In this document: positions 7,752-22,172 of the stretch, piece after piece
Layout: the number at the start of each line of letters is the position of its first letter
How positions within the stretch are numbered: the stretch's first letter is position 1
IMG/VR virus record: IMGVR_UViG_3300038424_000251
Coordinates: 62,001 to 126,000 of that record
Reading direction: 5' to 3' (one strand)
Length of the DNA: 64,000 bases
Program-made: the position numbers and the translations under genes
Notes under the pieces: model-generated
Told to the model about the DNA's origin: nothing
What the model saw: the letters and a program-made list of their open reading frames with translations, nothing else
The model's database searches: none

Positions 7752-8496
7752 CAGGGTCATGTTTTGGATAACTACCCCATTTATATTTGAAATACTCAAA
7801 TCCTTCTACTTCTTTTTTTCTTGTATTTTCTGCTTGTTCAGATGACCTAGTTCCAATACTGACAAAATGGTAAAAATTACAGTTGTAATTTCTATTCAAA
7901 TTCATTTTACATAAATTACATTTTAAGAAAAAGTCCCAATCAACAACGTTTCCACTAGGATATGTTTCATCCCAACCACCAACTTTTAGATAATTGGTTT
8001 TGGACATTAAAAACGGCAATGTTGACCCGCAAGAATCAACTTTATTTTGTCGCATTGTAGATTCCAATCTATAAAAATTATTCAAGTCAAATGTTTTTGC
8101 ATTTGTTCCAAAATCATATTTTATGAACTGCTTGAACATACTGTCATAAGGCTCTATTTGATTTGGACTTACAACATCGGTTTCCTTGTTGAAATTCTCT
8201 AGCAAAATTTTATCCCATTCTTTAGGGAATACGTTATCATCGTTGACAACTAAAATATTTTCAAAAGATGCATTATATACTCCAAAATTGGTTGACTTTG
8301 ATTGTCCATAATTACTTTCAAATATAATTGGAATTATTTGACTCTCATACTTTTTCAATATAGAATTGTTTATATCCAACGTTCCATCTATAACTACAAT
8401 TATCTCATTCTTGTAAATTTGGCTGCTTAATGCAGACCTGATGCACAAATCAAGATAATCGGGTTCTTTGTATGTTGGAATTATTACAGAAATCAT
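7729..8496 (-). CDS. glycosyltransferase family 2
   Basis: ISVIIPTY, VVIDG, NDDN, VGGWDE…DWDF. Confidence 0.85.
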   Translation of the reverse strand: MISVIIPTYKEPDYLDLCIRSALSSQIYKNEIIVVIDGTLDINNSILKKYESQIIPIIFESNYGQSKSTNFGVYNASFENILVVNDDNVFPKEWDKILLENFNKETDVVSPNQIEPYDSMFKQFIKYDFGTNAKTFDLNNFYRLESTMRQNKVDSCGSTLPFLMSKTNYLKVGGWDETYPSGNVVDWDFFLKCNLCKMNLNRNYNCNFYHFVSIGTRSSEQAENTRKKEVEGFEYFKYKWGSYPKHDPVTNLKSF

Positions 8497-9200
8497 AAAA
8501 TCTCATTGTCCCAATTTATTAGTGGCGCTAACCAAGGCAAATCGCCATGTGTGGAATAACTTGGAATCGGTGTTATCAATGTTCTTCCTTTGTCTCTTAA
8601 TTTCAAGAACATTCTGAAATCTTCGGGATAAGAACCAACTGTCCATTTTCTAAGTATAGGTTCATCTTCTCGTAATGTCTTTAATTTAGCTGCAAATGTC
8701 ATTGTTGTGGAATTGGTAAGTTTCCAATGACAGGATTTGCTTAGAAATACTTTGGTTATTTCACCACCATTTTCAATAAAAGGATTTCCACCTTTATCAC
8801 CATTCAAATATTTGTCAGGATGGTCATATAAGGAAATATAATCTGTACCTATATCAAATCCTTCTTCCATTATTGACTTTGAATTTTTACGGTGGATATA
8901 ATCATTTTCAACAAAATAGATTATTTCATCATCATTTTTTTGTTTTAATGCTAAATCTAACACTCTGTTGAAAGTCTGTGCGCTACTGCCCAAATTTGAT
9001 GAAATAATTGTATCTGCTGAAACTATATCTTGGACCATTTTATAAGTCTCATCGCAAACTCTATCAACTAAAATAAAAAAATTGTTGAGTTTATTATTGA
9101 GGAAATTTCGCTTAAAATTTTCGAGACAATTTTTATTGTTTATAAGGGGATGTTTTATTTTCTTATAACCAGCATCACTTAATCTGTAAAATATTATCAT
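8493..9200 (-). CDS. putative GT-A fold glycosyltransferase
   Basis: IIYFVENDYIH (DxD-like); cluster context. Confidence 0.6.
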   Translation of the reverse strand: MIIFYRLSDAGYKKIKHPLINNKNCLENFKRNFLNNKLNNFFILVDRVCDETYKMVQDIVSADTIISSNLGSSAQTFNRVLDLALKQKNDDEIIYFVENDYIHRKNSKSIMEEGFDIGTDYISLYDHPDKYLNGDKGGNPFIENGGEITKVFLSKSCHWKLTNSTTMTFAAKLKTLREDEPILRKWTVGSYPEDFRMFLKLRDKGRTLITPIPSYSTHGDLPWLAPLINWDNEIL

Positions 9201-9837
9201 AACTTTTATTTTTAAATATCAAATCTTCCTGTAATAGTTCACCATTCAAATAATGAGAATAAGGACTATCAACTACTATAAAATTTATATATTTCAAATA
9301 ATTTACAACCTCATCTTTTAATGGAGCGCCTTCGTTACAACTTTTTAAGGAAACTTCCAACAATAGATATTTTGATTTTTTTATGGTGTTTATTCCACCT
9401 TTTATGATATCTAATTCAGAACCTTGAGTATCTATTTTTATCAAATCGTATGTATCAGTTACAAGATTATCTAATATATTCATTGGAAGATATATAATTT
9501 CACAATTTTTATCATTAAAAAATTCTGATATTTCTCTATAAATTGAATTTCCTGTTGAACCTCTTTCTGTTTTATTGATATAGAATTTAACACTTGATTT
9601 CTCTTTATCTCCTAATAATGCTATTATGTAATGAATGCCCATACTCTTTAAAGCGTTTTCAAAAAAAGGATTAGCTTCAATCATTGTAAAACTAGCAGCC
9701 GGCCATACAGTTTTACATAAATTTGTAAACCATCCATTACTAGCACCAATATCCAAAATAGTATTTGGTGTAAAATTGAATTTATTTTTTATACCGTGTA
9801 AAGCACTTAAATCCATATTATACTTTTGTTTTATCAA
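9175..9837 (-). CDS. FkbM-family SAM methyltransferase
   Basis: LDIGASNG, EANP, LIKIDTQGSELDIIKG. Confidence 0.9.
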   Translation of the reverse strand: MIKQKYNMDLSALHGIKNKFNFTPNTILDIGASNGWFTNLCKTVWPAASFTMIEANPFFENALKSMGIHYIIALLGDKEKSSVKFYINKTERGSTGNSIYREISEFFNDKNCEIIYLPMNILDNLVTDTYDLIKIDTQGSELDIIKGGINTIKKSKYLLLEVSLKSCNEGAPLKDEVVNYLKYINFIVVDSPYSHYLNGELLQEDLIFKNKSYDNILQIK

Positions 9838-10765
9838 TCACATATTTTACTATATGTTCTGTTGTTAAATTATTTGTTAAATATGTATGTAGTTTATCAT
9901 TGATTTCGTGATATTTGTCATAATCAATTTCTATATCATTGAAAGTATTCAAGTCAAAATTTGTTATAGCATTTTTATCATTATATATGAATTTATTTTC
10001 TAATACAGTTTTATCAAATCCTTTGAATATATTAAAAACTTCTTCCAATGTTTTCTTAGGAAGCTTTTGTAAACTTTGTTTTGGACAATGTTTTATGTCT
10101 ATAAACAGTGGAATACATTTATTCATTATTATTTCATAATGACGAAGAGAATCCCAAGATGCTTTCTTCCAAGTATATCCAAACATAGATTGTTGGTAAT
10201 CTTCATAATAAGATTTTTCATCATTAAATACTAATGTTTCTATTATTCCCGGAATATTAGTTCCTATTAATTTATTTTTCTGTAATTCTCCTATATATAT
10301 TTTTTCTTTTGGTATTGAAAAATTTATAGGAATGACATCTTTTGTCTCATTTTCTATAAATGTTTTAAAATACAAACCTTTATTTAGTAGAGAATAATTC
10401 ACATCTGATGTATCACTACCATCTATAAAAACTATTTTATTTTTATCATAACAAGAAAATACTAAATCAATCAAATCCAAATTTCTATAAATTGCTCCAT
10501 AAATAACCAAGTCAAAATATTTATTTTTTATTTTATTTTCTATGTCTGTCCTATCTATGTTGTCGGATTTTTTCACAGTTCCACATAAAGTAAAACCTCT
10601 TCCATGAAAAGTATTAATTAGTGAAGATTTATTTATGTCATCATACATATACCATTGCGGATATAAGTCTATTATATCATCACCAAATAGAGATTTCAAT
10701 CCATGAAACAGAGAATCTGCCATGAAATCACTCATATGAAATTTAAAGATGTATAATATTTTCAT
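9818..10765 (-). CDS. putative glycosyltransferase (GT-B/exostosin-like)
   Basis: YYEDYQQSMFG…KKASWDSLRHYEIIMNKCIP; cluster context. Confidence 0.55.
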   Translation of the reverse strand: MKILYIFKFHMSDFMADSLFHGLKSLFGDDIIDLYPQWYMYDDINKSSLINTFHGRGFTLCGTVKKSDNIDRTDIENKIKNKYFDLVIYGAIYRNLDLIDLVFSCYDKNKIVFIDGSDTSDVNYSLLNKGLYFKTFIENETKDVIPINFSIPKEKIYIGELQKNKLIGTNIPGIIETLVFNDEKSYYEDYQQSMFGYTWKKASWDSLRHYEIIMNKCIPLFIDIKHCPKQSLQKLPKKTLEEVFNIFKGFDKTVLENKFIYNDKNAITNFDLNTFNDIEIDYDKYHEINDKLHTYLTNNLTTEHIVKYVIDKTKV

Positions 10766-10791
10766 TATAATTTACATTATATAGCATATTT

Positions 10792-11529
10792 TTATTTCCT
10801 GTATAGTTTAAATTCTGTTATACTTTGCCATTCTGTTAAGTCACCGTAATATTTTTTGAACATATCTGTTGGCACATGTTTATAACTTGAGTCGTTAAAT
10901 GGGATAGTGTATGTATAGTTTCCCCACTTTTTTGTAACATATTCAGCATTGTATGTTCTGGTTTCTGATGGAATCGGTGAGTTAAGATAAGTGGATGAAT
11001 TTCCGTTAAAGTAATGGGGTATGTTTAAACTGATTACTTTTACATCATTTAATTTACAACGGTATTTATAATCATTATCCTCACATCCAGCAAATAAAAA
11101 ATTTTCATCAAATCTTCCTACGGTGTTCCATGTATCTTTGTGTATTCCATATAAAGAGAATTCAAAAGAATTATCATAGGTTCCACATAATACTTTAGGA
11201 GATGTTTGTATGGTTATTTCATTTAAAATTTCTTCTGAAAATCTAGCATCTTCTTCTCCTATTATTATCTTATCTAACTTCATTGTATTAAATGCTATAT
11301 CACAGATTAAATTCCAACCAGCAGAACAGCAAATTTTCTTTGTGGTAAGATAGATGACATTATTTTTAATGTAATCAGGTATTTTTTGTTGGCCATTATC
11401 TATGAAGTACATTTTTGTATTTGGATTATCTTCATGTTTATACCATTCACAAAAATAGTCCACGGCATTATATCCTAATATGAATAAATTATTTTTTATA
11501 TTAAATTCTCTCATAACATGCCCAAGCAA
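10792..11529 (-). CDS. GT2-like glycosyltransferase
   Basis: FIDNG, SAGWN, EED, VGRFDENF..AGCEDNDY. Confidence 0.75.
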   Translation of the reverse strand: MLGHVMREFNIKNNLFILGYNAVDYFCEWYKHEDNPNTKMYFIDNGQQKIPDYIKNNVIYLTTKKICCSAGWNLICDIAFNTMKLDKIIIGEEDARFSEEILNEITIQTSPKVLCGTYDNSFEFSLYGIHKDTWNTVGRFDENFLFAGCEDNDYKYRCKLNDVKVISLNIPHYFNGNSSTYLNSPIPSETRTYNAEYVTKKWGNYTYTIPFNDSSYKHVPTDMFKKYYGDLTEWQSITEFKLYRK

Positions 11530-12133
11530 CTTGCTTAAAATCTGTTTTTGTATATTCTTTCAGATTATTTTTGGTTATAATATCTTTTATATTCTCATAT
11601 CTTATTTCTATCCAACCCCAACCTGAATATGGACCATAATCATGAGCCATTATAACATCTTGTGACTTTAGGAAATCTGCAAAATGATTAAATTCTTTTG
11701 GTTTGTCGCCACCGTCACACAATAAGCATACTTTTTTATTTGATGCTAGTATATCTTTTATGTATTTAATCGATGCTTCGGAAAAACAATCGTCATAAAT
11801 GCCTTTTATATTATTTTTATCAAAATATTCACGCAATCTATCTGAATATTCTTTACTCATATCTGTCATTTTTGTGGTATCATATAAATGGATATCAAAT
11901 GTATGAATATTATACGAAAGATTATGCTTTCTCTTTATTTCATTTAATATTATCGTAAGACCGCCTTTATTGGTTCCAATTTCTATTACTTCATCAAATT
12001 TCTTATCTATCATCAATTTCTCAAAATAATCAATTACAATAAACATTTGAGAAGCAATCCATTCTTCTTTGGAGTTTTTGATTGTAAAACCAAATCCTCC
12101 TCCAGTTCCCCATTTACTAATAATTTCTTCCAT
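11501..12133 (-). CDS. class I SAM-dependent methyltransferase (CmcI/Methyltransf_24-like)
   Basis: VIEIGTNKGG, TFDI, CDGG, AHDY. Confidence 0.75.
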   Translation of the reverse strand: MEEIISKWGTGGGFGFTIKNSKEEWIASQMFIVIDYFEKLMIDKKFDEVIEIGTNKGGLTIILNEIKRKHNLSYNIHTFDIHLYDTTKMTDMSKEYSDRLREYFDKNNIKGIYDDCFSEASIKYIKDILASNKKVCLLCDGGDKPKEFNHFADFLKSQDVIMAHDYGPYSGWGWIEIRYENIKDIITKNNLKEYTKTDFKQVAWACYERI

Positions 12134-12143
12134 AAAATATATT

Positions 12144-13037
12144 TTATTTCATTATTTTTTTAATTTCATCAATAACTTCATCGTCTGTTAAATACGGGTC
12201 CAATACTATATGCCTTTTATCTTTAAAATAATAAATAGGTCCAAGTTTCGGTTCTTTTATTTTTTTTATCACTCCATTCCATCCGTATAGTTGAAGGACA
12301 AAATCGCCCGTTGTAATAGTTCTGCATCCAACGCCACAAGCCATATTACACAGACCGCCTTCTGCTCCAAGGAAAACATCACAATGCTTCATCAAAGAGC
12401 ACTCAAATAAAAGAGATTTCTGATTGCCATCTGTAATGGAAATAGTAGATACTTGTGGTGTTTTTGGGGGAAACCCTATTTCAACAAAATTGAATGTGTC
12501 AGATAAACAAGATAAAATATAGTTTGTATTTCTGTGTTTTCCACCATAACCGAAATCAGGAACATCAATTCCTAATTCATATTCTTTTTTTGTGAATAGA
12601 AAACTTCTTTCAGACCAATTGGCAGCATGTGCTACCACTTTTTTACCATTCTTTCTTAGTTCATCTATAATGTTTTTTGCTACTTCATCATAGGATGAGT
12701 CTGTATAGACAGTAAATTCTGTATCTGGATTTTTTACACTAGCCCATTTTTGGCACTCTAATGGTGGTGGTTCTAAGAAAGAAAACGGTTTCATGTTTAT
12801 TACTTCATCATAATTTTCTAATATGTCTTCGGGAACAGTTGGATATGGCGTTGGAAAAGGAAGTAATCTTACTTTGTCTATGTATGGATTATTAGATAAG
12901 AGTCTGTAAATTTGAGGGAAGGCTATCACATACTCTATTTCATCAAATTTCTTTTCTTCTTTTAATTTTTTAGCAATTGAACTCTGGAAAAAGATATCTC
13001 CAAAATATCCAAAAGTTATTATCAAACATTTATGCAT
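12144..13037 (-). CDS. GT9 (heptosyltransferase-like) glycosyltransferase
   Basis: FGDIF, LSNNPYIDKV, CDVFLGAEGGLCNMACGVG. Confidence 0.75.
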   Translation of the reverse strand: MHKCLIITFGYFGDIFFQSSIAKKLKEEKKFDEIEYVIAFPQIYRLLSNNPYIDKVRLLPFPTPYPTVPEDILENYDEVINMKPFSFLEPPPLECQKWASVKNPDTEFTVYTDSSYDEVAKNIIDELRKNGKKVVAHAANWSERSFLFTKKEYELGIDVPDFGYGGKHRNTNYILSCLSDTFNFVEIGFPPKTPQVSTISITDGNQKSLLFECSLMKHCDVFLGAEGGLCNMACGVGCRTITTGDFVLQLYGWNGVIKKIKEPKLGPIYYFKDKRHIVLDPYLTDDEVIDEIKKIMK

Positions 13038-13395
13038 ATGACTTTTCTTCTATTAGATTAGAATTGGTTTTTTCGTTGATTACTCTTTTTATCCATGATC
13101 TTGCATCATTATTGATATAAATTGTTCTAGCTATTTCAATAAATTCTTTATCAAATAATTGTTGGTCTTCCTTATATCGTATTTTATCTTCGGCATCCCA
13201 TAATATTTTGTTTACTGTTTTTAACGAAACTAAGAAAGAATTAATAGTAGGGTCTTCTAAATTAAAAATGGATTTTAATTGTTCTAGTTCTTTCAATACA
13301 TTTTTTCGTTTTTCTTCGTCGGTTATATTCTCTAATTTAATCATTAAAATAGATATTTTGTCAAGTATTTCTCCATTTGATACTTCAATCTTCAT
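13030..13395 (-). CDS. DUF6165-family protein
   Basis: EVSNGEILDKISIL.IK…LWDAEDKIR…IYINNDAR..IKR.IN…EEKSY. Confidence 0.8.
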   Translation of the reverse strand: MKIEVSNGEILDKISILMIKLENITDEEKRKNVLKELEQLKSIFNLEDPTINSFLVSLKTVNKILWDAEDKIRYKEDQQLFDKEFIEIARTIYINNDARSWIKRVINEKTNSNLIEEKSYA

Positions 13396-13399
13396 AAAA

Positions 13400-14119
13400 T
13401 TAAAATTTTATATTTATATTGTTTATTTTTAACCACTTAACGTTTTCCAAATCTGATTCAAATTTAGAAACATTACAAGAAGAATCATTAATGCCTTTCT
13501 TCCGTGAATATTCTCTATTTGCAAGAATAGCTCTATTTCGTAATTCATCGGGGTCATTTTGTGGTGGTTCGCTATTTGGATGATATAGAGAGTAAAACAA
13601 ACCTTCCTTGTTTCTATGCCATGCGTAACCATTTTCTATCAGTCTGTCTCTTGTATCCATATCGGAACATCCCCAACCAATAAAACATGGATTTAATCCA
13701 TTCATCTTATAGAATACTTTTCTACTAAATATGAATACCCCACCATAATGTTGACTAGCATCGTATTTAAAATGTTTATATCCACCGGGTATTTTAGATT
13801 CATCTAGTTCTTCACCATTTTCATTTAAAAAAATTACCTGCCTCACGGGTGACATGGGCGTATCTTCGTTTGGTAAATCATAACTTACATTATCAGAAGG
13901 AACATAATCTACATCGTGGAATATTAATGTATCACCAGTGGCAAAAGAGGCACCTGTATTATATAACGCATGCTTCTTGAATATTTCTTTGTCATCTTGT
14001 TCACATATGATTATTTCATAATTTTTATCTTTAAACTTAGTCTGAAATACAGGTAGAATAGTTTGTAAATGTGATTCCCTGTCCCTATATGAAATTATTA
14101 TTGAATATTTGTTATTCAT
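13400..14119 (-). CDS. GT7-like galactosyltransferase
   Basis: SYRDRESHL, EQDD, FHDVD, GGV, MNG…GWG..D. Confidence 0.8.
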   Translation of the reverse strand: MNNKYSIIISYRDRESHLQTILPVFQTKFKDKNYEIIICEQDDKEIFKKHALYNTGASFATGDTLIFHDVDYVPSDNVSYDLPNEDTPMSPVRQVIFLNENGEELDESKIPGGYKHFKYDASQHYGGVFIFSRKVFYKMNGLNPCFIGWGCSDMDTRDRLIENGYAWHRNKEGLFYSLYHPNSEPPQNDPDELRNRAILANREYSRKKGINDSSCNVSKFESDLENVKWLKINNINIKF

Positions 14120-14969
14120 ACTTCTTGTTTATCATTTTATTCAATTCTTCCACTCTATCATATTGGTGAATAATACAATATGGTTCATTATTATTTCGAC
14201 AATAAATTATACCATCTTTGATTTCAGATATGTTGGACAACTGATTGATTTTTGTTCCTATTTGTAACGCCCAAGAGTCTTTAAAATTAACGACTTGGCA
14301 ATTATCTTTCAAAATACCTCTTGTTAAAATATTAAAAGATGGCTGATCACAATGACCAACCCCAACCGACATCAAATACATTATTAAGCAAAAATCAGGC
14401 ATTAATTTGGCATCACAAGCAAAAGTTCCTACATTACATGCTTCTTCATATTTGAGAAAATATTCATAAAGATATATCCCAAAATTTTTAATTAGGTTAT
14501 CTTTATTCCACGGTTCTGATTCATAAGTTATTCCTTCGGATGGAACCAATATAGGTTTATTACAATTTTTAGTTAACCAATCGCTGGGATTAATTTGAAA
14601 TATTATATCTCTACTATCGGTGTTTATGACATATCTATACAAAATTTGGCACTCTTTCAAATATTGCCATATATGGAACAAACGAACGTTGTGTATCAAC
14701 AAATGTGAATTTTGAGGCGTCACCAAACCACTATGCCATATGAAGTTTGTACCAATTTCATTACCTCTCATATCAGATGTAGGTATTAAGATATTTTTTA
14801 CATTCAATTCCTGTAGTTTCTGAATATATTCGTGATTATTGTTTTCAAAATTGTATGCAAGAATAAGAATATCTCCTGAATAGCTTGTATCTATTAAAGA
14901 GCGAATCCAATTTCGAATTTCACTCCATTGATAATTTTGGCTTATTGTAGTTATTACCAAATCCTTCAT
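14112..14969 (-). CDS. putative GT-A glycosyltransferase
   Basis: TDSRDIIFQINP, NVGT, DQPSFN, IIHQYDR. Confidence 0.65.
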   Translation of the reverse strand: MKDLVITTISQNYQWSEIRNWIRSLIDTSYSGDILILAYNFENNNHEYIQKLQELNVKNILIPTSDMRGNEIGTNFIWHSGLVTPQNSHLLIHNVRLFHIWQYLKECQILYRYVINTDSRDIIFQINPSDWLTKNCNKPILVPSEGITYESEPWNKDNLIKNFGIYLYEYFLKYEEACNVGTFACDAKLMPDFCLIMYLMSVGVGHCDQPSFNILTRGILKDNCQVVNFKDSWALQIGTKINQLSNISEIKDGIIYCRNNNEPYCIIHQYDRVEELNKMINKKYE

Positions 14970-16705
14970 AAACCTAACGATTTTATTATATTGTTTGTAA
15001 TATTTGGATATGATAGATTTTTAATATACCACTCTCTAGCATTTTTAGCAATATAATCTAAAAATTCATTATCCTTGATAACTTTCTTATATTTTTCACA
15101 AATATCTGATGCAAGTTTTTCTGGATTTTTATATCTAAATTTTTCATCAAGTTCTGCATCGACAGAAATATAATGGTAATCAGGTATCAATGGGTCAAAG
15201 TTTTTTGTTATATATTTTGGCCGTATTGTAGGGATACCAATTCCATATAGTTCAATATCTCTGAGGCAATGGTCCCCGCATGTATAACCACCACCAACTC
15301 CCGAACAAAGTATTAATTTGAAACCCAAACATTCATTAATATAACTGTCAAATGGCGTAGGAAAATTTCCAAAATGAAATTCGTGTTTTAATATTTGTGA
15401 TATGATTTTTATATATTCTCTACATTTATATTCTACTTGAGAAGGATTTTCATATATTGACCCTCGCCAACACAAATTATTATTCAAATCGGTTGATTTT
15501 CTATATTGTTGTATTGCTTCATAATTTGTTATTCCAAATTGCCAGAAAGTTTCAGGATACGGACCCGGATTTATATTTTTTCTTAGATTACTATCTTTTA
15601 TTGTTTCATCCCATAATGTTTCATTATATTGTCCTATTGAAGCTCCTATAAAATTTTTTGATTTAGAAAGTTTAACAGATAATGTTGGAGCATCCCCAAA
15701 ATCATAGGTTTTGAAATGCTTTGTATCATTAAATTCAATAATAGATATTGACCCTTGATTTATTAAAACTTCACAGTCATTTTTATAAGTAAACTTATCG
15801 ATTCCGTCCAAATTTTGCCAGTTTACTTTATACCCCTTTTCTTCCAGATGTTCTATAAACTTTCTAGTAGAATATTGGTCAAATCTTTCATCTATTATGC
15901 TTCTATGAAAGGTATATAAGTTTATAATATTAGTTTTTTGATTGTATCTCCTTAATACCTTTTTCCATGTATCTGTTGCTTTTTTTGTTGGGTTATAAAC
16001 AGCCCAAGGCCTACTAAAACCGCAATGTTTACAAAATACAGAGAATGATTCAATCATTTTTTCAAGAGTTACATCCTTCAATTCAGTAGCAACTGGAGGG
16101 AAATTAAATACACGAGATGCAGCTGCAGCATTTGTACACACAAAAAATCCCTCAGAGTTTAAAGCTTGTCCACAATCAACAGGACTATTACATCCGAGGG
16201 TATATGGTTCATCCATATCTTCTGGGCTATAAAGATGTGGTAAATGTTTAATACTCTTTGCTATATATGGTGTCTTATTCACTGTAAAAATTTCGAAGTT
16301 AAATTCTTTAACAATTTCTATTCCTTTTTTTACTTCATCGCCATATCCGCCTGTACACAAAATTAATTTTACATTAGGATTTGATTCTGCTTTATAGTCT
16401 GACAGTATTTTGCATATTTCTCTTAATCGAGGATGTAAAGCAGATTCTCCACCGTGAAGAACCAACCATTCCCATTTCCAATTTAATTTTTTGGAATCAT
16501 CCACTAATTTTTGTATTTGTTCCACGGTCATTTCTTTGTTGGTTGGAGCTTGCCACGTTAAACTTATACAATTTGGACATTTTAGTGTACACCTATAGGT
16601 AAGATGAATTTCTAAACGATTTAGTGTTGGAACACAATTTAATCTAGCAGTTGGTCCCATATAGAAATTGTTTGGTTTCGTTGGGTCATTTGGAATAGCT
16701 GGCAT
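14966..16705 (-). CDS. radical SAM domain fused to a C-terminal glycosyltransferase-like domain
   Basis: CTLKCPNC, GGES, extra Cys cluster (C…C…C…CKHC); C-terminal WRGS…LRDIELYGIG…PLIPDYHY…IAKNAREWY. Confidence 0.7.
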   Translation of the reverse strand: MPAIPNDPTKPNNFYMGPTARLNCVPTLNRLEIHLTYRCTLKCPNCISLTWQAPTNKEMTVEQIQKLVDDSKKLNWKWEWLVLHGGESALHPRLREICKILSDYKAESNPNVKLILCTGGYGDEVKKGIEIVKEFNFEIFTVNKTPYIAKSIKHLPHLYSPEDMDEPYTLGCNSPVDCGQALNSEGFFVCTNAAAASRVFNFPPVATELKDVTLEKMIESFSVFCKHCGFSRPWAVYNPTKKATDTWKKVLRRYNQKTNIINLYTFHRSIIDERFDQYSTRKFIEHLEEKGYKVNWQNLDGIDKFTYKNDCEVLINQGSISIIEFNDTKHFKTYDFGDAPTLSVKLSKSKNFIGASIGQYNETLWDETIKDSNLRKNINPGPYPETFWQFGITNYEAIQQYRKSTDLNNNLCWRGSIYENPSQVEYKCREYIKIISQILKHEFHFGNFPTPFDSYINECLGFKLILCSGVGGGYTCGDHCLRDIELYGIGIPTIRPKYITKNFDPLIPDYHYISVDAELDEKFRYKNPEKLASDICEKYKKVIKDNEFLDYIAKNAREWYIKNLSYPNITNNIIKSLGL

Positions 16706-16725
16706 ATATTTTTTATGTTAAATTT

Positions 16726-17715
16726 TTATGTTAAAAAGATTTCTTTGTATTTATTAATGACATTTTTTTCATTAAATCTATTTGAATACATATCCCAATT
16801 ATTGTTTTCAATAAAGGATTTATTTATACTATATAGTGTATCCATTAGTTCTTGCTCATCTTTATATAAAATTGCTTTCTCTCCTAATATTTCTATATGA
16901 TTTTTATCATATGTTGGGTCGCCCTCTCCTGTCCAAGTAATGACAGGTTTATTAGCAGCAGAAAATTCTCCACATGCAAGTCCAAATGTTTCTCCACCAA
17001 TTCTTCCATGTAACATAACATCACATGAATGAATAAAATTAAATATTTTTTCCTCTGTTCCTTCCCACGGTAAATAAATTATTCTTTCGTGTTCATAAAA
17101 TTTATTTGTAGCTAAAAATATAAAATATATGTCCTTACGAAAATTAAGTATTTGTTTAACACAATTTTGAACAAATGGTACATTAAAACTATCATATCCT
17201 CCATGACGACCAACAATAAGAGAATCGTCTGATATATTAAGTTCCTTTCTCAAATTTTTTGTTGGATTATAATTTTTAACAATATGAGGAACATATAGTG
17301 TTTGCCCAAATTTTCTAGCAAGATATTCTGACACACCAGCATATACAGTACCATGTGGTTCATGCATAAGAAAAACACAATGAACTCCTGATTTGCAATT
17401 GAAAGGAACTATATTGTCATATTGCCCGGATTTTATTAGATGAATAAAATCTATGTTATTTTCTTCTATAATTTTTTCTATTAGATAATTGGTTTCTATT
17501 TGACCTTGTTGAGATTGATTGTGTATTGGTGGTCTGTCATAAACAATAACTTCAAATTGAGATTTGAGTTTGTCTAGCCCCTCATTTTTGTTTTGAAGTG
17601 ATGTGACAAAAATAATATCATGTTTTAGAAGGTTTCTTAATCCTATACCATAATCGTATGAAAGTCTTGTAGAACCTCTACCATCAAATTGATTACAATG
17701 TATTACTATTTTCAT
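16726..17715 (-). CDS. GT4-like glycosyltransferase
   Basis: VGRHGG, FIHSCDVMLHGRIGGETFGLACGEF…KPVIT. Confidence 0.8.
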   Translation of the reverse strand: MKIVIHCNQFDGRGSTRLSYDYGIGLRNLLKHDIIFVTSLQNKNEGLDKLKSQFEVIVYDRPPIHNQSQQGQIETNYLIEKIIEENNIDFIHLIKSGQYDNIVPFNCKSGVHCVFLMHEPHGTVYAGVSEYLARKFGQTLYVPHIVKNYNPTKNLRKELNISDDSLIVGRHGGYDSFNVPFVQNCVKQILNFRKDIYFIFLATNKFYEHERIIYLPWEGTEEKIFNFIHSCDVMLHGRIGGETFGLACGEFSAANKPVITWTGEGDPTYDKNHIEILGEKAILYKDEQELMDTLYSINKSFIENNNWDMYSNRFNEKNVINKYKEIFLT

Positions 17716-17718
17716 ACT

Positions 17719-19149
17719 TTACCTCAAAACTGAACCTATTACATTATTAAATTTAACTCTAGTGTTGGTTATATTAACATTATTTGTAATATCTAATTTA
17801 AATTTTACTTCCTGCTCAACAATATCCCTACATTTTACTATTTCTTCTGAATTTATAAAATCTGTAAATACATAAGACTTATAATTTCTCGGTATTCCTT
17901 TATAAAATTGTGAAGTTTTTGAATAATCTATATTTATAGAATACAATTTATCTTTTGTTTTCATTGCTTCATATTCCCATACATCATCATATTTGTGCGT
18001 TGATAAATCATAATAATGACTTCCGGGATATGGAGTTATTATAGACAAGTCCATATCTTCTACTTTATTGGTTATTAACCAATCTTTAATATCTAATATT
18101 GATTTTTTTGTTTCACCGGGATGACCACAAGACATCAATGCTTTTATTTTGATATTGTATTTTTTGCATAGACGCACAACATTCTCATTATCTTCTTTAT
18201 TTGATTTTTTGTTTATATTTACCAAAATTCTATCATTGGCAGATTCAAATCCACATAATAACCATCTGAATCCACAAATTTCCATTAAAGAAGCTTGTTC
18301 CTCATTAAAAAGTTCAGATTTTATAAATCCTCTAAAAGTAAATTTTATATTTAATGTATTTTGAAATTCTATAAGTTTTTTTAACAGTAATGGTAGATTC
18401 TTATTGACATTTAATTCATCATCATAAAACATAAATGATTTATAACCATACGTCTTGTATAAGAATTCTACCTCTTTAACTACAGAATCTACTGACCTAT
18501 TTCTGATTTTTCTTAGGTTATTGCTAAATCTTCCACAACAAAAAGCACAATTAAACGGACATCCTAGTTGAGATATTATGCTAGTACAAGGTTCTTCATC
18601 TATAAAAAAATGATATGATTTTAAATCAACCAAATTCCTATTTGAAAATGGTAATTTATCTAATTGAACATTAGTTAAAAACAATCGTTTATCTGTATTA
18701 GCGTCTATAATTTTGTTATCAAACAACTTATTATTTAAATAATTAAGTATTGATAATTCTCCATCTCCAATAAAAATCGTATCAAAATTATTTAACATAT
18801 GATTCTTATTAGTTTCTATTCGTTGATTTTGATTCTGTGGTGAAAAACACGATGTAGCATGTGGACCACCCAATATTTTTTTAACTTCTTGAGGAATATG
18901 TTTAATTAGTTCTATAACGTGTGGATATTGTGGAGTGCTGGATGTAAATCCGATTATATCAAACTTTTTATGATTTAATACAATAGAAAATGTTTCTTCA
19001 TAATTTTCTATTCCTGACAAATCTAAAACATTAATAGGATATTCTGTATAAGTTTTTGTAACATTAGCTACACTAAGTATTCCAAGATGTGGCAGTGACT
19101 TTTCATCAATTAAGAATGGTGACGGTGGTATTACAAATAAGATGTTCAT
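17719..19149 (-). CDS. cobalamin-binding radical SAM protein (class B methyltransferase-like)
   Basis: PHLG, ILGGPHAT, GDGE, GCPFNCAFC, YDDE, GFESAN, PGET, PYPGS. Confidence 0.9.
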   Translation of the reverse strand: MNILFVIPPSPFLIDEKSLPHLGILSVANVTKTYTEYPINVLDLSGIENYEETFSIVLNHKKFDIIGFTSSTPQYPHVIELIKHIPQEVKKILGGPHATSCFSPQNQNQRIETNKNHMLNNFDTIFIGDGELSILNYLNNKLFDNKIIDANTDKRLFLTNVQLDKLPFSNRNLVDLKSYHFFIDEEPCTSIISQLGCPFNCAFCCGRFSNNLRKIRNRSVDSVVKEVEFLYKTYGYKSFMFYDDELNVNKNLPLLLKKLIEFQNTLNIKFTFRGFIKSELFNEEQASLMEICGFRWLLCGFESANDRILVNINKKSNKEDNENVVRLCKKYNIKIKALMSCGHPGETKKSILDIKDWLITNKVEDMDLSIITPYPGSHYYDLSTHKYDDVWEYEAMKTKDKLYSINIDYSKTSQFYKGIPRNYKSYVFTDFINSEEIVKCRDIVEQEVKFKLDITNNVNITNTRVKFNNVIGSVLR

Positions 19150-19160
19150 TATTGGATATC

Positions 19161-19832
19161 CTATATTACATTATGACCTTTATTATCTTCAACACTAAAC
19201 AGTTGATTATATCTTAGATTGGTTTGTATTTGTTTTTCTATTGTTTTGTCATGATAAAGAGCTAAATCTTCATCTGCTGGTAGAAAAGCATATTGGTCAT
19301 GGCCAACAATTTTCTCGTGTAATTTTCTATCCCATTTGATTTTTTCTGGAATTCTTTTGTAAATACGACTTTGAAAATCAGGCCAATTAACTATATATCT
19401 GTTTTCACAAAATGGAGAAAATGTTAATCTCCATCCCCATTGTTTAGCATGTTCAGTTGTAACGCCTCTAAAATCATTAATTCTTGGAACGTATATCAAT
19501 TCCACATTTAAATTAGTAGAAATGATGTCCCTCACGTTGAAAATTAATGTTTCAGATGGTAGTTCATCTCCGTCAATTTGGAAAACCCAATCACCAGAAC
19601 ATTTTTCATTTCCATAATTTTTATGTGACCCATAATCATTATTTAGTAAATGCTGAAATACGGTTATTTTTCCCTTAGCTTTGTTTATAATTTTTTTGGT
19701 TTCTTCATTATCTGAAAAATCATCCAATACAACAATTTCATCATCATCAAACTTATTATTTATTAATCGTTCCAAAAGTTTGATTAAAGTATCGGTTTCA
19801 TTATGAATAGTAACTAGGTAAGATATTTTCAT
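19161..19832 (-). CDS. glycosyltransferase family 2
   Basis: ISYLVTIHNE, VLDDFS, FQIDGDE, WPDFQSR, LHE. Confidence 0.85.
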   Translation of the reverse strand: MKISYLVTIHNETDTLIKLLERLINNKFDDDEIVVLDDFSDNEETKKIINKAKGKITVFQHLLNNDYGSHKNYGNEKCSGDWVFQIDGDELPSETLIFNVRDIISTNLNVELIYVPRINDFRGVTTEHAKQWGWRLTFSPFCENRYIVNWPDFQSRIYKRIPEKIKWDRKLHEKIVGHDQYAFLPADEDLALYHDKTIEKQIQTNLRYNQLFSVEDNKGHNVI

Positions 19833-21217
19833 AGTACCGAGCTAGTTACTGAATTGGTTGCTTCAGAACTTGAACTTGTTATTGGTGAAGGTGGATTTAT
19901 AGGTTTTAATTTCGGTAATTCTATCTTTTTCAATTTTGGTAAAATTAGCTTTTGTTCTGTAGCAAATTTAGGAACGTATTTTTCCAGAAGTTCGTAAAAT
20001 CTTTTATCCATAGCTTGAATAGAAAATTCTTCAACATTTTTTTTGCGAAGTTGTTCAGCTTTTTCAAGGAATGCTTTATAAAAATTAAAACAATTTCTCA
20101 TAGATTCCATTGCTTTAGGATAATCAACTGTAAACCATGATGATTCTTTAATCAGCCATTCATTTGCGCAATCTTCTGGAATTTTTTTTATTTCACCATG
20201 TAATAATTTACAAAATTTTGAGTCAAGAAAATCCAAATGACCGCTCCAATTAGAAGCTAATACAGGTTTACCACTTAAAGTAGAAAGCAATAATGGAAGA
20301 CCAAATCCTTCACCATGAGTGAAAGAAATATGTGCTTTAATCTTTGGATGATTATAGAGAGCATTCATTTCTGATTCCGTTAATTCGCCATATAGAATAT
20401 AAACGTTGGGAAGGTCTTTGGTATTTTTTTCCTGTTCAACTATGGACCTAACGGATTTTAATCGGTTAATCATATCGTGTTTATCCATGTTACATATTGC
20501 TGCTCCATTAGTCTTAATAACCAGAGCTGGTTTTCTTTTAGGTCCCATATTGGAAAATGTTATTAAGAAGGTTTTAATCAAATTACCAATATCTTTTCTG
20601 TCATTAAACAAACCACCACTTGTCCATTGACCAACAAAAAGAAAACAAAAATCTTCTTTAATAACAGACAATTCTTCTTCAATTCTTGGTTCAAATGATT
20701 TGTCATTTCCGTAAATTGATGTATCTGCTCCCCAAAATAACACTTCTATTGGTTTTATAGATTTTAATATTATAGGTGATTGGTTTGGTGCGGCTGGTTT
20801 TTGATATAATGGTTCTTCAAATACACTTTTAGCATGATTTGAAGTAACAATATTAAAATTCATTCTATTCAATCCTTCAATCCAATCTGTTCTGGCTAAG
20901 GTCGTCTCAATACCAGCAGTTATACCAATATTATATTTTGCTGGTGGTTGAAATTCATTAGGAATAGAACACTGAATAAATAATTCTGGTTGTTTAGACA
21001 ATGGTTGTCTAACAATTCTTTTGTATAATTCTTGCTCTGCAGAATCAGTTACATCTGAAAATAAATATTTTCTACTGCAATTACCCCAACGAGTAGGAAC
21101 TATCATCAAGTCATATTTGTCATATCTGAGCAAGCTTTTAGCTAAGGCTAATCCCAGATCACCATAGCCTGACCTAGTCCAAACCGGGGATTGAAAAATA
21201 CATATTGGTTTGTTCAT
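19829..21217 (-). CDS. GT4 glycosyltransferase
   Basis: SGYG, FLFVGQW…RKD, HGEGFGLP…KPVLASNWSGHLDF. Confidence 0.85.
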   Translation of the reverse strand: MNKPICIFQSPVWTRSGYGDLGLALAKSLLRYDKYDLMIVPTRWGNCSRKYLFSDVTDSAEQELYKRIVRQPLSKQPELFIQCSIPNEFQPPAKYNIGITAGIETTLARTDWIEGLNRMNFNIVTSNHAKSVFEEPLYQKPAAPNQSPIILKSIKPIEVLFWGADTSIYGNDKSFEPRIEEELSVIKEDFCFLFVGQWTSGGLFNDRKDIGNLIKTFLITFSNMGPKRKPALVIKTNGAAICNMDKHDMINRLKSVRSIVEQEKNTKDLPNVYILYGELTESEMNALYNHPKIKAHISFTHGEGFGLPLLLSTLSGKPVLASNWSGHLDFLDSKFCKLLHGEIKKIPEDCANEWLIKESSWFTVDYPKAMESMRNCFNFYKAFLEKAEQLRKKNVEEFSIQAMDKRFYELLEKYVPKFATEQKLILPKLKKIELPKLKPINPPSPITSSSSEATNSVTSSVL

Positions 21218-21227
21218 ATTATGATAC

Positions 21228-21926
21228 TCATTTCTCTCTTTCTTTTATCATGGTTTCATATTTTTTTGGAGCGGGGATTTCTGATGCTCCTGTTTTCTTC
21301 CATCTATCCATTAAATTATTAGCTTCTTTAGGAGATTCAATTTTTTTTTCTGTAATATGAATAGTATTGGTACCACTGCTGCCAAATCCACCAGAACCAC
21401 GTTCGGTAGTTGTCAAGTCAGCAACTACAACCCAATCAATGGGGTTTGTTACTTCTGACACAAGTTGACCGATTTTGTCGCCTTTTTTGTAGATTTTTTC
21501 CATATTGATTTTACCTCTTAAAGTTTTTCTTCCCCAACCAAATTCTTTTGTATTTACAGTTTCATTAATTGGAACAACACAAGAAAACATGTCATCCGGT
21601 TGCCAGATATATTTAAAACAAAGAAGTAATTCGCCTCTATAATCATTATCAATTAACCCAATACTGTTTGCTAGAATCAAATTATATTTTCTCAAGCTTG
21701 AACGTGGAAAAATAAGCGTATGATAATTTTGATTGTATGTGTCTGTTTGTGGAGAAATGAATAACCCTGTTTTATATTCAATATAATCTATTGATTTCCA
21801 ATCATCTCCGTCTTGTTTTCCAATAATTTTGGGGTCTTCCAATGCTATAACGTCATAGCCAGAAGATTGTGAAGTAGCTGCTTGAGGTATAACTAAACCA
21901 TCTGAATTTTTAACGTGTATTTTCAT
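21228..21926 (-). CDS. dut: trimeric dUTPase
   Basis: SSGYD, PRSS, GLIDNDYRGEL, GDKIGQL, RGSGGFGSSG. Confidence 0.95.
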   Translation of the reverse strand: MKIHVKNSDGLVIPQAATSQSSGYDVIALEDPKIIGKQDGDDWKSIDYIEYKTGLFISPQTDTYNQNYHTLIFPRSSLRKYNLILANSIGLIDNDYRGELLLCFKYIWQPDDMFSCVVPINETVNTKEFGWGRKTLRGKINMEKIYKKGDKIGQLVSEVTNPIDWVVVADLTTTERGSGGFGSSGTNTIHITEKKIESPKEANNLMDRWKKTGASEIPAPKKYETMIKEREK

Positions 21927-21965: not shown

Positions 21966-22172
21966 CTATAATTTTATTTCTAAAAGGTCTATGGTTGTAG
22001 ATGATTTATCATATATGATAATAGGTAATTTTTTGTTACTAATTCCTATTTCTTTTGACATTTCATCACCTATTTTATTGGCATATTTTTTATAATCTTC
22101 CTGTTTTCCGAAACGATTACTATCAAGACCTATCAATAAAACCGTCTTAGTTTTGGGTTTTATTTTTTTCAT
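21966..22172 (-). CDS. hypothetical protein
   Basis: 68 aa ORF coupled to the upstream GT. Confidence 0.55.
   Translation of the reverse strand: MKKIKPKTKTVLLIGLDSNRFGKQEDYKKYANKIGDEMSKEIGISNKKLPIIIYDKSSTTIDLLEIKL

What the first reader, a model, noticed from the sequence alone, without database searches (positions are those of the whole stretch)
14966..16705. Radical SAM / glycosyltransferase-like fusion
Seen: the first ~255 aa contain CxxxCxxC and a second Cys group (Twitch/SPASM-like), joined in frame to an ~320-aa GT-B-like domain. Inference: coupled radical chemistry (oxidation, epimerisation or deoxygenation) and sugar transfer in one polypeptide, an unusual architecture. A recent fusion through stop-codon loss is an alternative.
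Basis: partly seen in the sequence, partly recalled or inferred. Interest (0 to 1): 0.6.

Follow-up and report, generated by a model that had tools for sequence, protein, structure and literature searches.

The report
Phage radical-SAM/glycosyltransferase fusion enzyme
A 365-kb peat-bog phage carries one gene that joins a small iron-sulfur "radical SAM" enzyme (closest in shape to enzymes that oxidise sugar alcohols) directly to a sugar-transferring enzyme; the join is real DNA, unique for this transferase family, and one of many independent fusions tying this uncharacterised radical enzyme family to glycan building.

Summary
ORF 14966-16705 (-) encodes 579 aa. Residues 1-260 are a Twitch-type radical SAM enzyme. 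It has CX3CX2C (C39/C43/C46), a GGE motif, and four further invariant Cys (C172/C190/C225/C228). Its best structural matches are the sugar/cyclitol dehydrogenases SpeY and BtrN (Z 13.9 and 13.4). Residues 261-579 form a GT-B glycosyltransferase fold (Z 13-15.6).

The join has no linker and the GT half has no start codon of its own. Independent contigs from three other peat/wetland runs cross the junction without any difference, so it is not an assembly error.

About 110 relatives of the GT half are all standalone ~320-aa phage genes. The closest relatives of the rSAM half are standalone ~260-aa genes. No other protein among 1.84 billion representatives carries both halves.

The wider rSAM family is nevertheless fused repeatedly, in both orders, to unrelated glycosyltransferases (GT2, GT4, GT32, PLOD-GT, a GT-A), methyltransferases and a sulfotransferase.

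The gene sits in a 15-gene operon of soluble glycan-building enzymes in a T4-like jumbo phage. Best reading: a recent in-frame rearrangement produced a bifunctional glycan-tailoring enzyme. The exact radical reaction (oxidation or epimerisation of a sugar) and the glycan's acceptor are inferred, not shown.

The parts
14966..16705 (-). Whole fused ORF, 579 aa plus a TGA stop that overlaps the ATG of the next gene
   Evidence: It is the only copy of either family's close kin in the 365-kb record.
15926..16705 (-). N-terminal half, residues 1-260: a complete Twitch-type radical SAM enzyme including its normal C-terminal tail
   Evidence: Pfam PF04055 and PF13353. Standalone homologs of 254-265 aa are 55-72% identical and end at positions equal to residues 256-263. 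The model has pLDDT 93.0. Best fold matches are SpeY at Z 13.9 and BtrN at Z 13.4.
16568..16591 (-). CX3CX2C motif (C39, C43, C46), the site of the SAM-binding [4Fe-4S] cluster
   Evidence: Invariant in 68 of 68 family members.
16445..16453 (-). G85-G86-E87 ('GGE') SAM-binding motif
   Evidence: Invariant in 68 of 68 family members. Its role follows from general radical SAM knowledge.
16022..16192 (-). Twitch-like auxiliary cluster region: C172, C190, C225 and C228 (invariant), plus C178 (94%)
   Evidence: The spacing fits a truncated SPASM motif with a single CX2C. There is no PF13186 SPASM hit. In BtrN the auxiliary cluster has four Cys ligands (PMC9012708, PMC10337720).
15920..15940 (-). 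Junction, residues 256-262, with no linker and an A6 run at 15934-15939
   Evidence: rSAM homology runs to about residue 262 and GT homology starts at residue 260/261. The two share the residues I-N, a possible microhomology join. There is no ATG, GTG or TTG in frame until residue 299. Contigs of runs X8, X10 and X12 cross the junction with 0 differences.
14969..15925 (-). C-terminal half, residues 261-579: GT-B fold glycosyltransferase of a phage-only family. It corresponds to residues 4-321 of standalone homologs.
   Evidence: 82 clusters and 25 IMG/VR loci are all standalone ~320-aa genes. The model has pLDDT 92.7. It matches GT4-type and GT90-type enzymes.
7729..21926 (-). Context: a tightly packed 15-gene minus-strand operon of soluble glycan-building enzymes. 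It holds GT2 x2, a GT7-like gene, a galactosyltransferase-like gene, a GT1-like gene, an FkbM methyltransferase, a B12-binding rSAM, DUF6165, several unnamed conserved genes and a dUTPase-like gene.
   Evidence: Gaps between genes range from -29 to +26 nt, and no gene has a transmembrane-like segment.
16726..17715 (-). Upstream 329-aa conserved cluster gene. It serves as the synteny anchor.
   Evidence: It is 80% identical to the gene upstream of the standalone rSAM in L006. It is 68% identical to the gene directly upstream of the standalone GT in L002.
14112..14969 (-). Downstream 285-aa conserved cluster gene. It serves as the second synteny anchor.
   Evidence: It is 48% identical to the gene downstream of the standalone GT in L002.

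Best explanation
The ORF is a genuine, recently formed bifunctional enzyme of a phage glycan-assembly operon.

How it arose: an in-frame deletion or recombination joined the last residues of a complete Twitch-type radical SAM gene to residue 4 of a GT-B glycosyltransferase gene. The join probably used a short shared I-N (ATH AAC) microhomology. It removed the stop codon, the GT's own start codon and whatever lay between the two genes.

Proposed mechanism (inferred):
- The GT-B half transfers a sugar from a nucleotide sugar onto a soluble, cytoplasmic acceptor. This is most likely a growing glycan on a phage protein.
- The rSAM half cleaves SAM at the C39/C43/C46 cluster to make a 5'-deoxyadenosyl radical.
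- That radical abstracts a hydrogen from a sugar carbon of the same glycan.
- The substrate radical is then resolved in one of two ways. It may be oxidised to a keto-sugar, with the Cys4 auxiliary cluster taking the electron, as in BtrN and SpeY. Or it may be quenched from the other face to give an epimer, with the extra conserved C178 as a candidate H donor.

The rSAM step is an accessory tailoring step. Most phages with this GT lack the rSAM.
For: Shown:
- The ORF and its motifs are present.
- Both halves give confident folds.
- The rSAM half is closest to the two Twitch dehydrogenases that act on sugar or cyclitol alcohols: SpeY at Z 13.9 over 207 residues and BtrN at Z 13.4 over 183 residues. 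The next group scores 10.6 or less.
- The GT half matches GT-B enzymes over its whole length.
- The junction is identical in independent contigs of X8, X10 and X12. The stretch is present in 24 peat/wetland runs.
- The GT half has no start codon of its own.
- This is the only copy of the GT family in the genome.
- The window protein keeps every family-invariant residue of both halves.
- Synteny shows three arrangements.
- The rSAM family is fused independently, at either end, to 10 GT domains of at least five families, 3 methyltransferases and 1 sulfotransferase, among 30 long members scanned.
- A second contig carries two more GT-rSAM fusions.
- An 84-member Uroviricota cluster of about 624 aa, all with a GT47 domain, matches the rSAM half with TM 0.74 by query.

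Inferred:
- The acceptor, the donor sugar and the reaction type.
- The cytoplasmic acceptor follows from the absence of any membrane protein, flippase or polyprenyl transferase in the operon.
Against: - No activity, expression or protein data exist.
- The two halves were not predicted to dock (one search gave no answer).
- The Atlas model of the whole protein is poor, with pTM 0.48.
- By sequence profile the best solved relative of the rSAM half is the peptide epimerase EpeE/YydG (E 1e-10, N-terminal 107 positions only). A protein substrate is therefore not excluded.
- The GT family works without this rSAM in 5 of 5 other phage records searched, 3 of them complete. Coupling is therefore not obligatory.
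- Only contigs, not raw reads, could be laid. Minor variants at the A6 run would be invisible. In run X14 two contigs end at the junction.
Confidence: 0.6

Rival explanations
1. The fusion is real DNA but an evolutionary accident. A deletion welded two cluster genes together, and one half is inactive or on its way to decay, most likely the accessory rSAM. The phage keeps the ORF only for the GT activity.
For: - The pairing is unique among about 110 GT relatives and about 500 rSAM relatives.
- There is no linker.
- The GT family does not need the rSAM elsewhere.
- No docking was predicted (which is no evidence either way).
Against: - All invariant residues of both families are intact.
- The same sequence is found unchanged in contigs from samples of 2017 to 2021.
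- The same rSAM family forms stable fusions with other GTs, seen in several independent assemblies.
Confidence: 0.17
2. The rSAM half acts on a protein, not on a sugar. It would epimerise or oxidise a residue of the acceptor protein, as EpeE or anSME do. The GT half would then glycosylate that protein directly.
For: - The best profile hit in the PDB is the peptide epimerase EpeE/YydG.
- anSME, a protein Cys/Ser oxidase, is the third fold match at Z 10.6.
- Top Foldseek hits of the GT half include protein O-glycosyltransferases: POGLUT1, POGLUT2 and SdgB.
Against: - The two best fold matches, both over nearly the whole domain, are small-molecule sugar/cyclitol dehydrogenases.
- There is no RiPP-recognition element or SPASM second cluster.
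- The fusion partners include sulfotransferases and methyltransferases typical of glycan tailoring.
Confidence: 0.15
3. The operon, including this enzyme, hypermodifies phage DNA with a glycan, as T4 glucosyltransferases and the 5hmC-glycan clusters do. It would not decorate a protein.
For: - The cluster lies beside replication and nucleotide genes: a dUTPase-like gene, Mom, an HNH gene and the DNA polymerase.
- T4 AGT and BGT appear among the fold matches at Z 12.5 and 10.7.
- Phage GT clusters that build di- and trisaccharides on 5hmC are known (bioRxiv 10.1101/2023.12.21.572611).
Against: - No thymidylate-synthase/dCMP-hydroxymethylase family gene is present in the complete 365-kb record, and the control for this search was positive.
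- No Tet/JBP hit was found, but that control was uninformative.
- More than nine GTs plus O- and C-methylation and deoxysugar genes exceed any known DNA glycan.
- The cited paper does not mention radical SAM enzymes.
Confidence: 0.12
4. Assembly or sequencing artefact: an indel in the A6 run, or a chimeric join, has merged two separate genes.
For: - An A6 homopolymer sits exactly at the junction.
- A shift of one base either way gives a stop within 2-4 codons.
- In run X14 two contigs end at 15931-15939.
Against: - Independent contigs from X8 (15584-16900), X10 (15682-16900) and X12 (15858-16027) cross the junction with no difference and no gap.
- 24 runs hold the stretch.
- A one-base error would leave the GT's own ATG in place. 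It is absent, and the three codons in its place differ at several bases from relatives.
Confidence: 0.03

Closest known systems
BtrN (2-deoxy-scyllo-inosamine dehydrogenase, butirosin pathway; PDB 4M7T/4M7S)
   Same: - It is a very small rSAM of about 250 aa with a shortened barrel and a C-terminal Twitch domain.
- Its auxiliary [4Fe-4S] cluster has four Cys ligands.
- It is the best Foldseek hit (E 8e-6) and scores Z 13.4 over 183 residues.
- It oxidises a secondary alcohol on a sugar-like ring (PMC9012708).
   Different: - Sequence identity is only 10-15%.
- BtrN is a standalone enzyme of a bacterial aminoglycoside pathway.
- The phage family has a fifth conserved Cys (C178).
- The phage family is embedded in, or fused to, glycosyltransferases.
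SpeY (Twitch radical SAM dehydrogenase, spectinomycin pathway; PDB 7WZV)
   Same: - It is the best VIA match: Z 13.9, rmsd 3.5 over 207 residues.
- From my own knowledge, it acts on a sugar residue after the glycosylation step. That is the order of events proposed here.
   Different: - Sequence identity is 11-12%.
- It is standalone and about 300 aa long.
- It acts on a small-molecule antibiotic intermediate.
EpeE/YydG and NeoN-type radical SAM epimerases
   Same: - They have Twitch/SPASM-type architecture.
- EpeE is the best profile-to-PDB hit (E 1.2e-10).
- These epimerases use a conserved free Cys as H-atom donor. A fifth conserved Cys (C178) exists here.
   Different: - EpeE acts on a peptide.
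- The match covers only the N-terminal 107 profile positions.
- The fold Z is 8.6, below that of the dehydrogenases.
- NeoN is cited from memory and was not tested here.
GT-B glycosyltransferases of the GT4 / Glyco_trans_1_2 / GT90 (POGLUT) groups
   Same: - The GT half has the same two-Rossmann fold over its whole length. Matches include GlgM (Z 15.6), chlorovirus NY2A GT 3OY2 (Z 14.5), PglA (Z 14.3) and POGLUT2 (Z 13.7).
- Sequence identity is highest to POGLUT1 and POGLUT2, at 14-16%.
- Atlas neighbour clusters carry PF13524 and PF05686.
   Different: - No Pfam, NCBIfam or PDB sequence-profile hit was found.
- It is a compact 320-aa family seen only in Uroviricota contigs.
- It has its own invariant motifs: W413-R-G-S416, the G471-D483 block and H511-Y512.
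Uncharacterised metagenomic rSAM-GT fusion proteins (for example P0110, P0155, P0193 and P0181, and a ~624-aa Uroviricota GT47 cluster)
   Same: - They carry the same rSAM family (28-38% identity over residues ~25-260), fused to a glycosyltransferase.
- They occur in similar clusters with a B12-rSAM and a DegT-family gene.
   Different: - The partner GT families differ: GT2, GT4, GT32, PLOD-GT, GT47 and a GT-A.
- The domain orders differ.
- None contains the GT family found here.
- None is characterised or named.

Membership tests
Radical SAM superfamily (PF04055) | CX3CX2C motif for the SAM-binding [4Fe-4S] cluster | tested here: met
   C39, C43 and C46 are invariant in 68 of 68 relatives.
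Radical SAM superfamily (PF04055) | Profile score above the curated cut-off | tested here: met
   33.1 bits against 29.5 for the whole protein, and 35.0 bits for the N-half alone.
Radical SAM superfamily (PF04055) | Partial TIM-barrel core with a GGE SAM-binding motif | tested here: met
   The model has pLDDT 93 with alternating beta/alpha units. G85-G86-E87 is invariant. Fold matches are radical SAM enzymes only, down to about Z 5.5.
Radical SAM superfamily (PF04055) | Reductive cleavage of SAM to 5'-deoxyadenosine | not testable with these tools
   This needs anaerobic reconstitution and an assay.
Twitch-domain radical SAM enzymes (BtrN/SpeY type) | One auxiliary cluster site C-terminal to the barrel, with Cys ligands in a truncated SPASM pattern | tested here: met
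   C172-x13-G186-x3-C190 ... C225-x2-C228 are all invariant. Actual cluster binding was not tested.
Twitch-domain radical SAM enzymes (BtrN/SpeY type) | Structural similarity over the core plus the Twitch domain | tested here: met
   SpeY gives Z 13.9 over model residues 27-249. BtrN gives Z 13.4 over residues 24-238. Both lie about 3 Z units above the next group. BtrN is the top Foldseek hit.
Twitch-domain radical SAM enzymes (BtrN/SpeY type) | Two-electron oxidation of a secondary alcohol on a sugar or cyclitol | not testable with these tools
   This is inferred from fold neighbours only.
SPASM-domain radical SAM enzymes (two auxiliary clusters) | A seven-to-eight-Cys motif including CX2CX5CX3C, and a PF13186 hit | tested here: not met
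   Only one CX2C and five Cys are present. There is no PF13186 hit.
GT-B fold glycosyltransferases | Two Rossmann-like domains with an inter-domain cleft | tested here: met
   The model has pLDDT 92.7. There are 84 chains at Z of 8 or more, and the top 43 rows are GT-B enzymes covering residues about 2-324.
GT-B fold glycosyltransferases | Nucleotide-sugar dependent glycosyl transfer | not testable with these tools
   No assay was possible. The conserved Arg, Asp, Glu and His residues are listed.
CAZy GT4 (Pfam Glycos_transf_1) or GT90 (Pfam Glyco_transf_90) | Sequence-profile membership | tested here: not met
   There is no Pfam or NCBIfam hit at E of 1 or less and no PDB profile hit at E of 10 or less. 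The relationship is by fold only. Atlas look-alike clusters carry PF13524 and PF05686 in some members.
Phage DNA glucosyltransferases (T4 AGT/BGT type) | A hydroxymethyl-pyrimidine pathway in the same genome to supply the acceptor | tested here: not met
   PF00303 is absent from the complete record, with a positive control. The Tet_JBP search was empty but its control was uninformative.

The most novel reading that the evidence does not exclude
The ~250-aa five-Cys Twitch rSAM family is a new class of radical enzymes that edit sugars after they have been built into a glycan. The edit would be polymer-level oxidation or epimerisation. Phages would use these enzymes to make rare sugars on their virions from ordinary host nucleotide sugars. 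The repeated fusions to GTs, methyltransferases and sulfotransferases would mark them as on-line tailoring modules. The window's protein would be the youngest such fusion, caught just after it formed.
Probability: 0.3. Interest if true: 0.75.

Novelty: new variant of a known kind. Interest (0 to 1): 0.52.

Why it matters
Radical SAM enzymes that act on carbohydrates are known almost only from antibiotic pathways.

This work defines a large, unnamed family with about 500 representatives at E below 1e-10. It is tied by many independent gene fusions to glycosyltransferases and other glycan-tailoring enzymes, much of it in phage contigs.

The window's protein offers a single polypeptide with both activities, and natural split versions exist for comparison. 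That makes the family's chemistry directly testable.

It also documents, with three synteny states, how a phage glycan operon gains a tailoring step and then welds it to a transferase. Finally, it adds to the open question of what the large GT-rich islands of aquatic T4-like phages actually glycosylate.

Tried and rejected
- GenBank phages: a tblastn with the whole protein found no match.
- IMG/VR scans with the rSAM half, as a single sequence and as alignment A1, found no confirmed relative. The pattern method is probably too narrow here.
- PDB sequence-profile search with the GT-half alignment gave nothing at E of 10 or less.
- hhalign of the unknown C-extension of P0102 against the GT-half profile showed no relation.
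- Mixed full-length alignment A3 misaligned P0086 and was not used for folding. As a result no full-length model of my own was made, because both fold jobs went to the two halves.
- Complex prediction of the rSAM half against the GT half returned 'no answer' with score 0.00. I do not count this for or against binding.
- Z-base genome idea, raised by a MazZ-like gene: no PurZ/adenylosuccinate-synthetase family gene is present. Dropped.
- DNA-glycan idea: no TS/hydroxymethylase family gene is present. The Tet_JBP search was uninformative.
- Literature searches for described rSAM-GT fusions or for this family found none. They found only remarks that T4-like aquatic phages carry GT-rich variable regions with rSAM cassettes (PMC7029224; PMC12801897).
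- Internal start or programmed frameshift at the A6 run was considered. There is no canonical start before residue 299 and no Shine-Dalgarno sequence at useful spacing. A -1 slip would give a near-native standalone rSAM (AAC then TAA). However, A6 with quick out-of-frame stops is expected by chance in DNA of 29% G+C, so it stays a curiosity.
No genetic code other than table 11 was used. Read laying was given 2,101 letters.
Full report
**Setting**

The window is bases 62001-126000 of a 365,299-bp IMG/VR virus record that CheckV rates complete. G+C is about 29-31%. A T4-type family B DNA polymerase lies at 29588-32185. Its best match in GenBank phages is only 44% identical (Microcystis phage Mel-JY01). 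The source is therefore a distant T4-like jumbo phage. Its DNA is found in peat and wetland metagenomes.

**The observation**

ORF 14966..16705 on the minus strand encodes 579 aa.

- Residues 35-140 match Pfam Radical_SAM (33.1 bits, cut-off 29.5) and Fer4_12.
- NCBIfam gives only weak, generic matches of residues ~28-120 to MoaA, PqqE, viperin, NrdG and similar models, all far below their cut-offs.
- The C-terminal 325 aa have no Pfam or NCBIfam hit.

In an alignment of 68 family members:

- C39, C43 and C46 are invariant.
- G85-G86-E87 is invariant.
- C172, C190, C225 and C228 are invariant.
- C178 is present in 94% of members.
- The other Cys residues (C24, C98, C117) are not conserved.

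**The two halves as folds**

The GT half was folded with 37 homologs.

- It gives pLDDT 92.7 and pTM 0.90.
- It matches GT-B glycosyltransferases over its whole length. Examples are GlgM (Z 15.6), the chlorovirus NY2A GT (Z 14.5), PglA (Z 14.3) and POGLUT2 (Z 13.7).
- The highest sequence identities, 14-16%, are to POGLUT1 and POGLUT2.
- Atlas look-alike clusters are Uroviricota 'hypothetical proteins' and bacterial Glyco_trans_1_2/GT90 clusters.

The rSAM half was folded with 68 homologs.

- It gives pLDDT 93.0.
- Its two best matches are the Twitch dehydrogenases SpeY (Z 13.9, 207 residues) and BtrN (Z 13.4, and the top Foldseek hit).
- The next matches are anSME (10.6), ChlB, SuiB, PqqE, BlsE, MoaA, viperin, EpeE and DesII.
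- By sequence profile the best solved relatives are EpeE/YydG, CteB, GDGT-MAS and SpeY, all over the N-terminal core only.

The four invariant extra Cys fit the truncated-SPASM (Twitch) pattern with a fully Cys-ligated auxiliary cluster, as described for BtrN (PMC9012708, PMC10337720). The full SPASM motif is absent.

**Is the fusion real?**

The junction is ...Y-N-Q-K | T-N-I | I-N-L-Y..., at window 15920-15940.

- Standalone rSAM homologs (P0084-P0086; 254-265 aa; 55-72% identical) end at positions equal to residues 256-263.
- Standalone GT homologs begin M-x-x-(I/L)-N-L-Y, so the window's GT half starts at their residue 4.
- There is therefore no linker. The last helix of the rSAM model (245-257) runs straight into the first strand of the GT model.
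- The tail of P0084 (...K-I-N-T-stop) and the head of the GT (M-R-T-I-N-L-Y) share I-N at exactly the collinear position. This suggests a microhomology-mediated in-frame deletion (inference).
- The GT half has no ATG, GTG or TTG in frame before residue 299, and it contains no Met at all.

An A6 run lies on the junction, and either one-base shift hits a stop within 2-4 codons. I therefore checked other data sets.

- 24 peat/wetland runs hold the stretch.
- I chose four runs that are not flagged as the possible source. Contigs of X8 (15584-16900), X10 (15682-16900) and X12 (15858-16027) cross the junction with no difference and no gap.
- In X14 two contigs end at 15931-15939, so that run does not bridge the junction.
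- These are contigs, not raw reads, so minority variants cannot be excluded.

The ESM Atlas also holds the 579-aa sequence letter for letter. An assembly or sequencing artefact is very unlikely.

**Fused or split in relatives?**

- A word-index search with the whole protein found 82 clusters. All are ~320 aa and all cover only residues 261-579 at 48-80% identity.
- 25 IMG/VR loci all have an in-frame stop within about 20 codons upstream of the GT start.
- The exhaustive HMMER search of 1.84 billion representatives gave 1015 hits. None has both halves.
- The window's own protein is not shown by these tools, so near-identical copies may be hidden as well.

Synteny gives three states.

- L002: 329-aa gene (68% identical) -> GT (67%) -> 285-aa gene (48%), with no rSAM. 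The contig of the closest GT (P0002, 80% identical) has a gene ending 2 nt before the GT start and in another frame. No DNA was available for that contig.
- L006: 329-aa gene (80%) -> standalone rSAM (71%) -> Methyltransf_23 gene -> GT family gene (40%).
- The window: 329-aa gene -> rSAM::GT -> 285-aa gene.

In L007 the rSAM sits between homologs of two other genes of the window's operon. Five other phage records with the standalone GT, three of them complete, have no rSAM of this family. The same model scores E 4e-87 on the window's own record.

So the rSAM is a movable accessory of these operons. The window's join is a derived, lineage-specific event. It is not simple stop-codon loss between ancestral neighbours.

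**The wider rSAM family**

The exhaustive search shows a large family, with 508 hits at E of 1e-10 or less, mostly to the rSAM half. Most members are standalone proteins of 230-300 aa that cover residues ~25-258. I scanned 30 members longer than 350 aa against Pfam.

- 10 carry a glycosyltransferase domain:
  - GT2: P0110, P0179, P0181, P0191, P0193 and P0223.
  - PLOD-GT: P0133.
  - Nucleotid_trans: P0145.
  - GT1/4: P0155.
  - Gb3_synth/GT32: P0161.
- 3 carry methyltransferase domains: P0114, P0142 and P0164.
- 1 carries a sulfotransferase domain: P0215.
- 1 carries a second rSAM-SPASM module: P0158.
- 15 have extensions with no Pfam hit.

The rSAM lies at the N-terminus in some members and at the C-terminus in others, so these are independent fusion events. 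Several are seen in more than one assembly.

Contig L037 carries the GT1-rSAM fusion next to a B12-rSAM, NifU, a DegT-family gene, a 715-aa Glyco_tran_28_C+rSAM+SPASM protein and three more rSAM genes. The Atlas lists an 84-member Uroviricota cluster of about 624 aa, all with Exostosin_GT47, whose models match the rSAM half (TM 0.74 by query).

This 'Rosetta stone' pattern is the strongest evidence that the rSAM family works on glycans alongside transferases.

**Genomic context**

The gene is the eighth of 15 tightly packed minus-strand genes at 7729-21926, with gaps from -29 to +26 nt. The operon contains:

- two GT2 genes;
- a GT7-like galactosyltransferase;
- a phrog 'galactosyl transferase';
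- a weak GT1-like gene;
- an FkbM methyltransferase;
- DUF6165;
- a B12-binding rSAM, at 17719-19149;
- several conserved unnamed genes;
- a dUTPase-like gene.

A larger GT1/GT4 gene lies at 22169-23671. On the other strand next door are a DegT-family enzyme most like RfbH (375 bits, cut-off 423) and a short-chain epimerase/dehydratase.

None of the 22 proteins examined has a transmembrane-like segment, and no flippase, polymerase or polyprenyl-phosphate transferase is present. This suggests assembly on a soluble cytoplasmic acceptor (inference).

The complete record has no thymidylate-synthase/dCMP-hydroxymethylase family gene. That argues against a hydroxymethyl-pyrimidine DNA acceptor.

Papers on related aquatic T4-like phages note GT-rich variable regions with rSAM cassettes, but assign no function (PMC7029224; PMC12801897; PMC12619734).

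**Mechanism proposed**

Shown by sequence and fold:

- an intact SAM-cluster site;
- a SAM-binding motif;
- a Cys4 auxiliary site;
- an intact GT-B domain that keeps all family-invariant residues.

Inferred:

- The GT half adds a sugar to the operon's glycan.
- The rSAM half abstracts a hydrogen from a carbinol carbon of a sugar in that glycan.
- The substrate radical is then either oxidised to a ketone through the auxiliary cluster, as in BtrN and SpeY, or quenched to an epimer. C178 is a candidate H-atom donor, as in EpeE-type epimerases.

I put about 0.95 on the fusion being real DNA. I put about 0.7 on both halves being active in one glycan pathway. I put about 0.4-0.5 on sugar oxidation or epimerisation as the chemistry.

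**Verdict**

- The thing is a new variant of known kinds, namely a Twitch rSAM plus a GT-B transferase.
- Its main value is as an entry point to a large uncharacterised family of glycan-associated radical enzymes in phages.

Noticed in passing
window 17719-19149 (-): A B12-binding radical SAM protein of 476 aa lies two genes upstream in the same operon. Its best but sub-threshold NCBIfam matches are HpnJ, BchE, PhpK and AprD4. The same pairing, a B12-rSAM next to a GT-rSAM fusion, recurs in contig L037.
   Followed up: partly
window 5618-6916 (+) and 6909-7751 (+): A DegT/DnrJ/EryC1-family enzyme is most like RfbH, the CDP-4-keto-6-deoxyglucose 3-dehydrase type (375 bits, cut-off 423). It overlaps by 8 nt an SDR epimerase/dehydratase that lacks roughly the first 90 profile positions. 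These look like deoxysugar supply genes for the glycan operon.
   Followed up: partly
window 3714-4133 (+): A MazZ-like dATP/dGTP diphosphohydrolase N-terminal domain (PF18909) is present. This domain is typical of 2-aminoadenine (Z-base) phages. However, no PurZ/adenylosuccinate-synthetase family gene exists in the 365-kb record.
   Followed up: yes
window 1384-2724 (+) and 4137-4877 (+): Two proteins match the Druantia DruA family (PF14236; E 6e-26 and 2e-22). They are encoded by the phage itself and flank the clamp-loader-like and MazZ-like genes.
   Followed up: no
window 24532-25077 (-) and 23936-24466 (-): A Mom-family protein (PF25680, E 1e-23) and a NUMOD4/HNH homing-endonuclease-like gene lie between the glycan operon and the DNA polymerase region. 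The phage probably modifies its DNA by a route unrelated to the glycan genes.
   Followed up: no
L037:1-15911 (Logan contig, 32,781 bp): A contig is unusually rich in radical SAM genes, with seven in 16 kb. They include two different GT-rSAM fusions (636 aa GT1+rSAM; 715 aa Glyco_tran_28_C+rSAM+SPASM). NifU, a DegT-family gene and a GDSL lipase are also present.
   Followed up: partly
window 15934-15939 (-), the A6 run at the junction: A -1 slip at the A6 run would read AAC then TAA. That would release a near-native standalone rSAM of about 258 aa. A +1 shift stops after four codons. This is probably chance in AT-rich DNA, but it lies exactly at the domain boundary.
   Followed up: partly
L003:153-1322 and the related loci L004 and L005: In 177-kb relatives, the homologous glycan operon (without the rSAM) is preceded by a phage-encoded S-adenosylmethionine synthetase. 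It is followed by a NUDIX gene.
   Followed up: no
window 16726-17715 (-): The conserved 329-aa upstream gene has no family hit. By eye, its C-terminal part carries a G-G-E-x-F-G...K-P-V-I stretch like the nucleotide-sugar-binding motif of GT4 enzymes, so it may be another GT-B transferase. This was not tested.
   Followed up: no
protein P0083 (331 aa): One homolog of the GT family is normal for about 210 residues and then continues into a long Gly/Ser/Thr-rich low-complexity tail. It may be a frameshifted or chimeric gene call.
   Followed up: no
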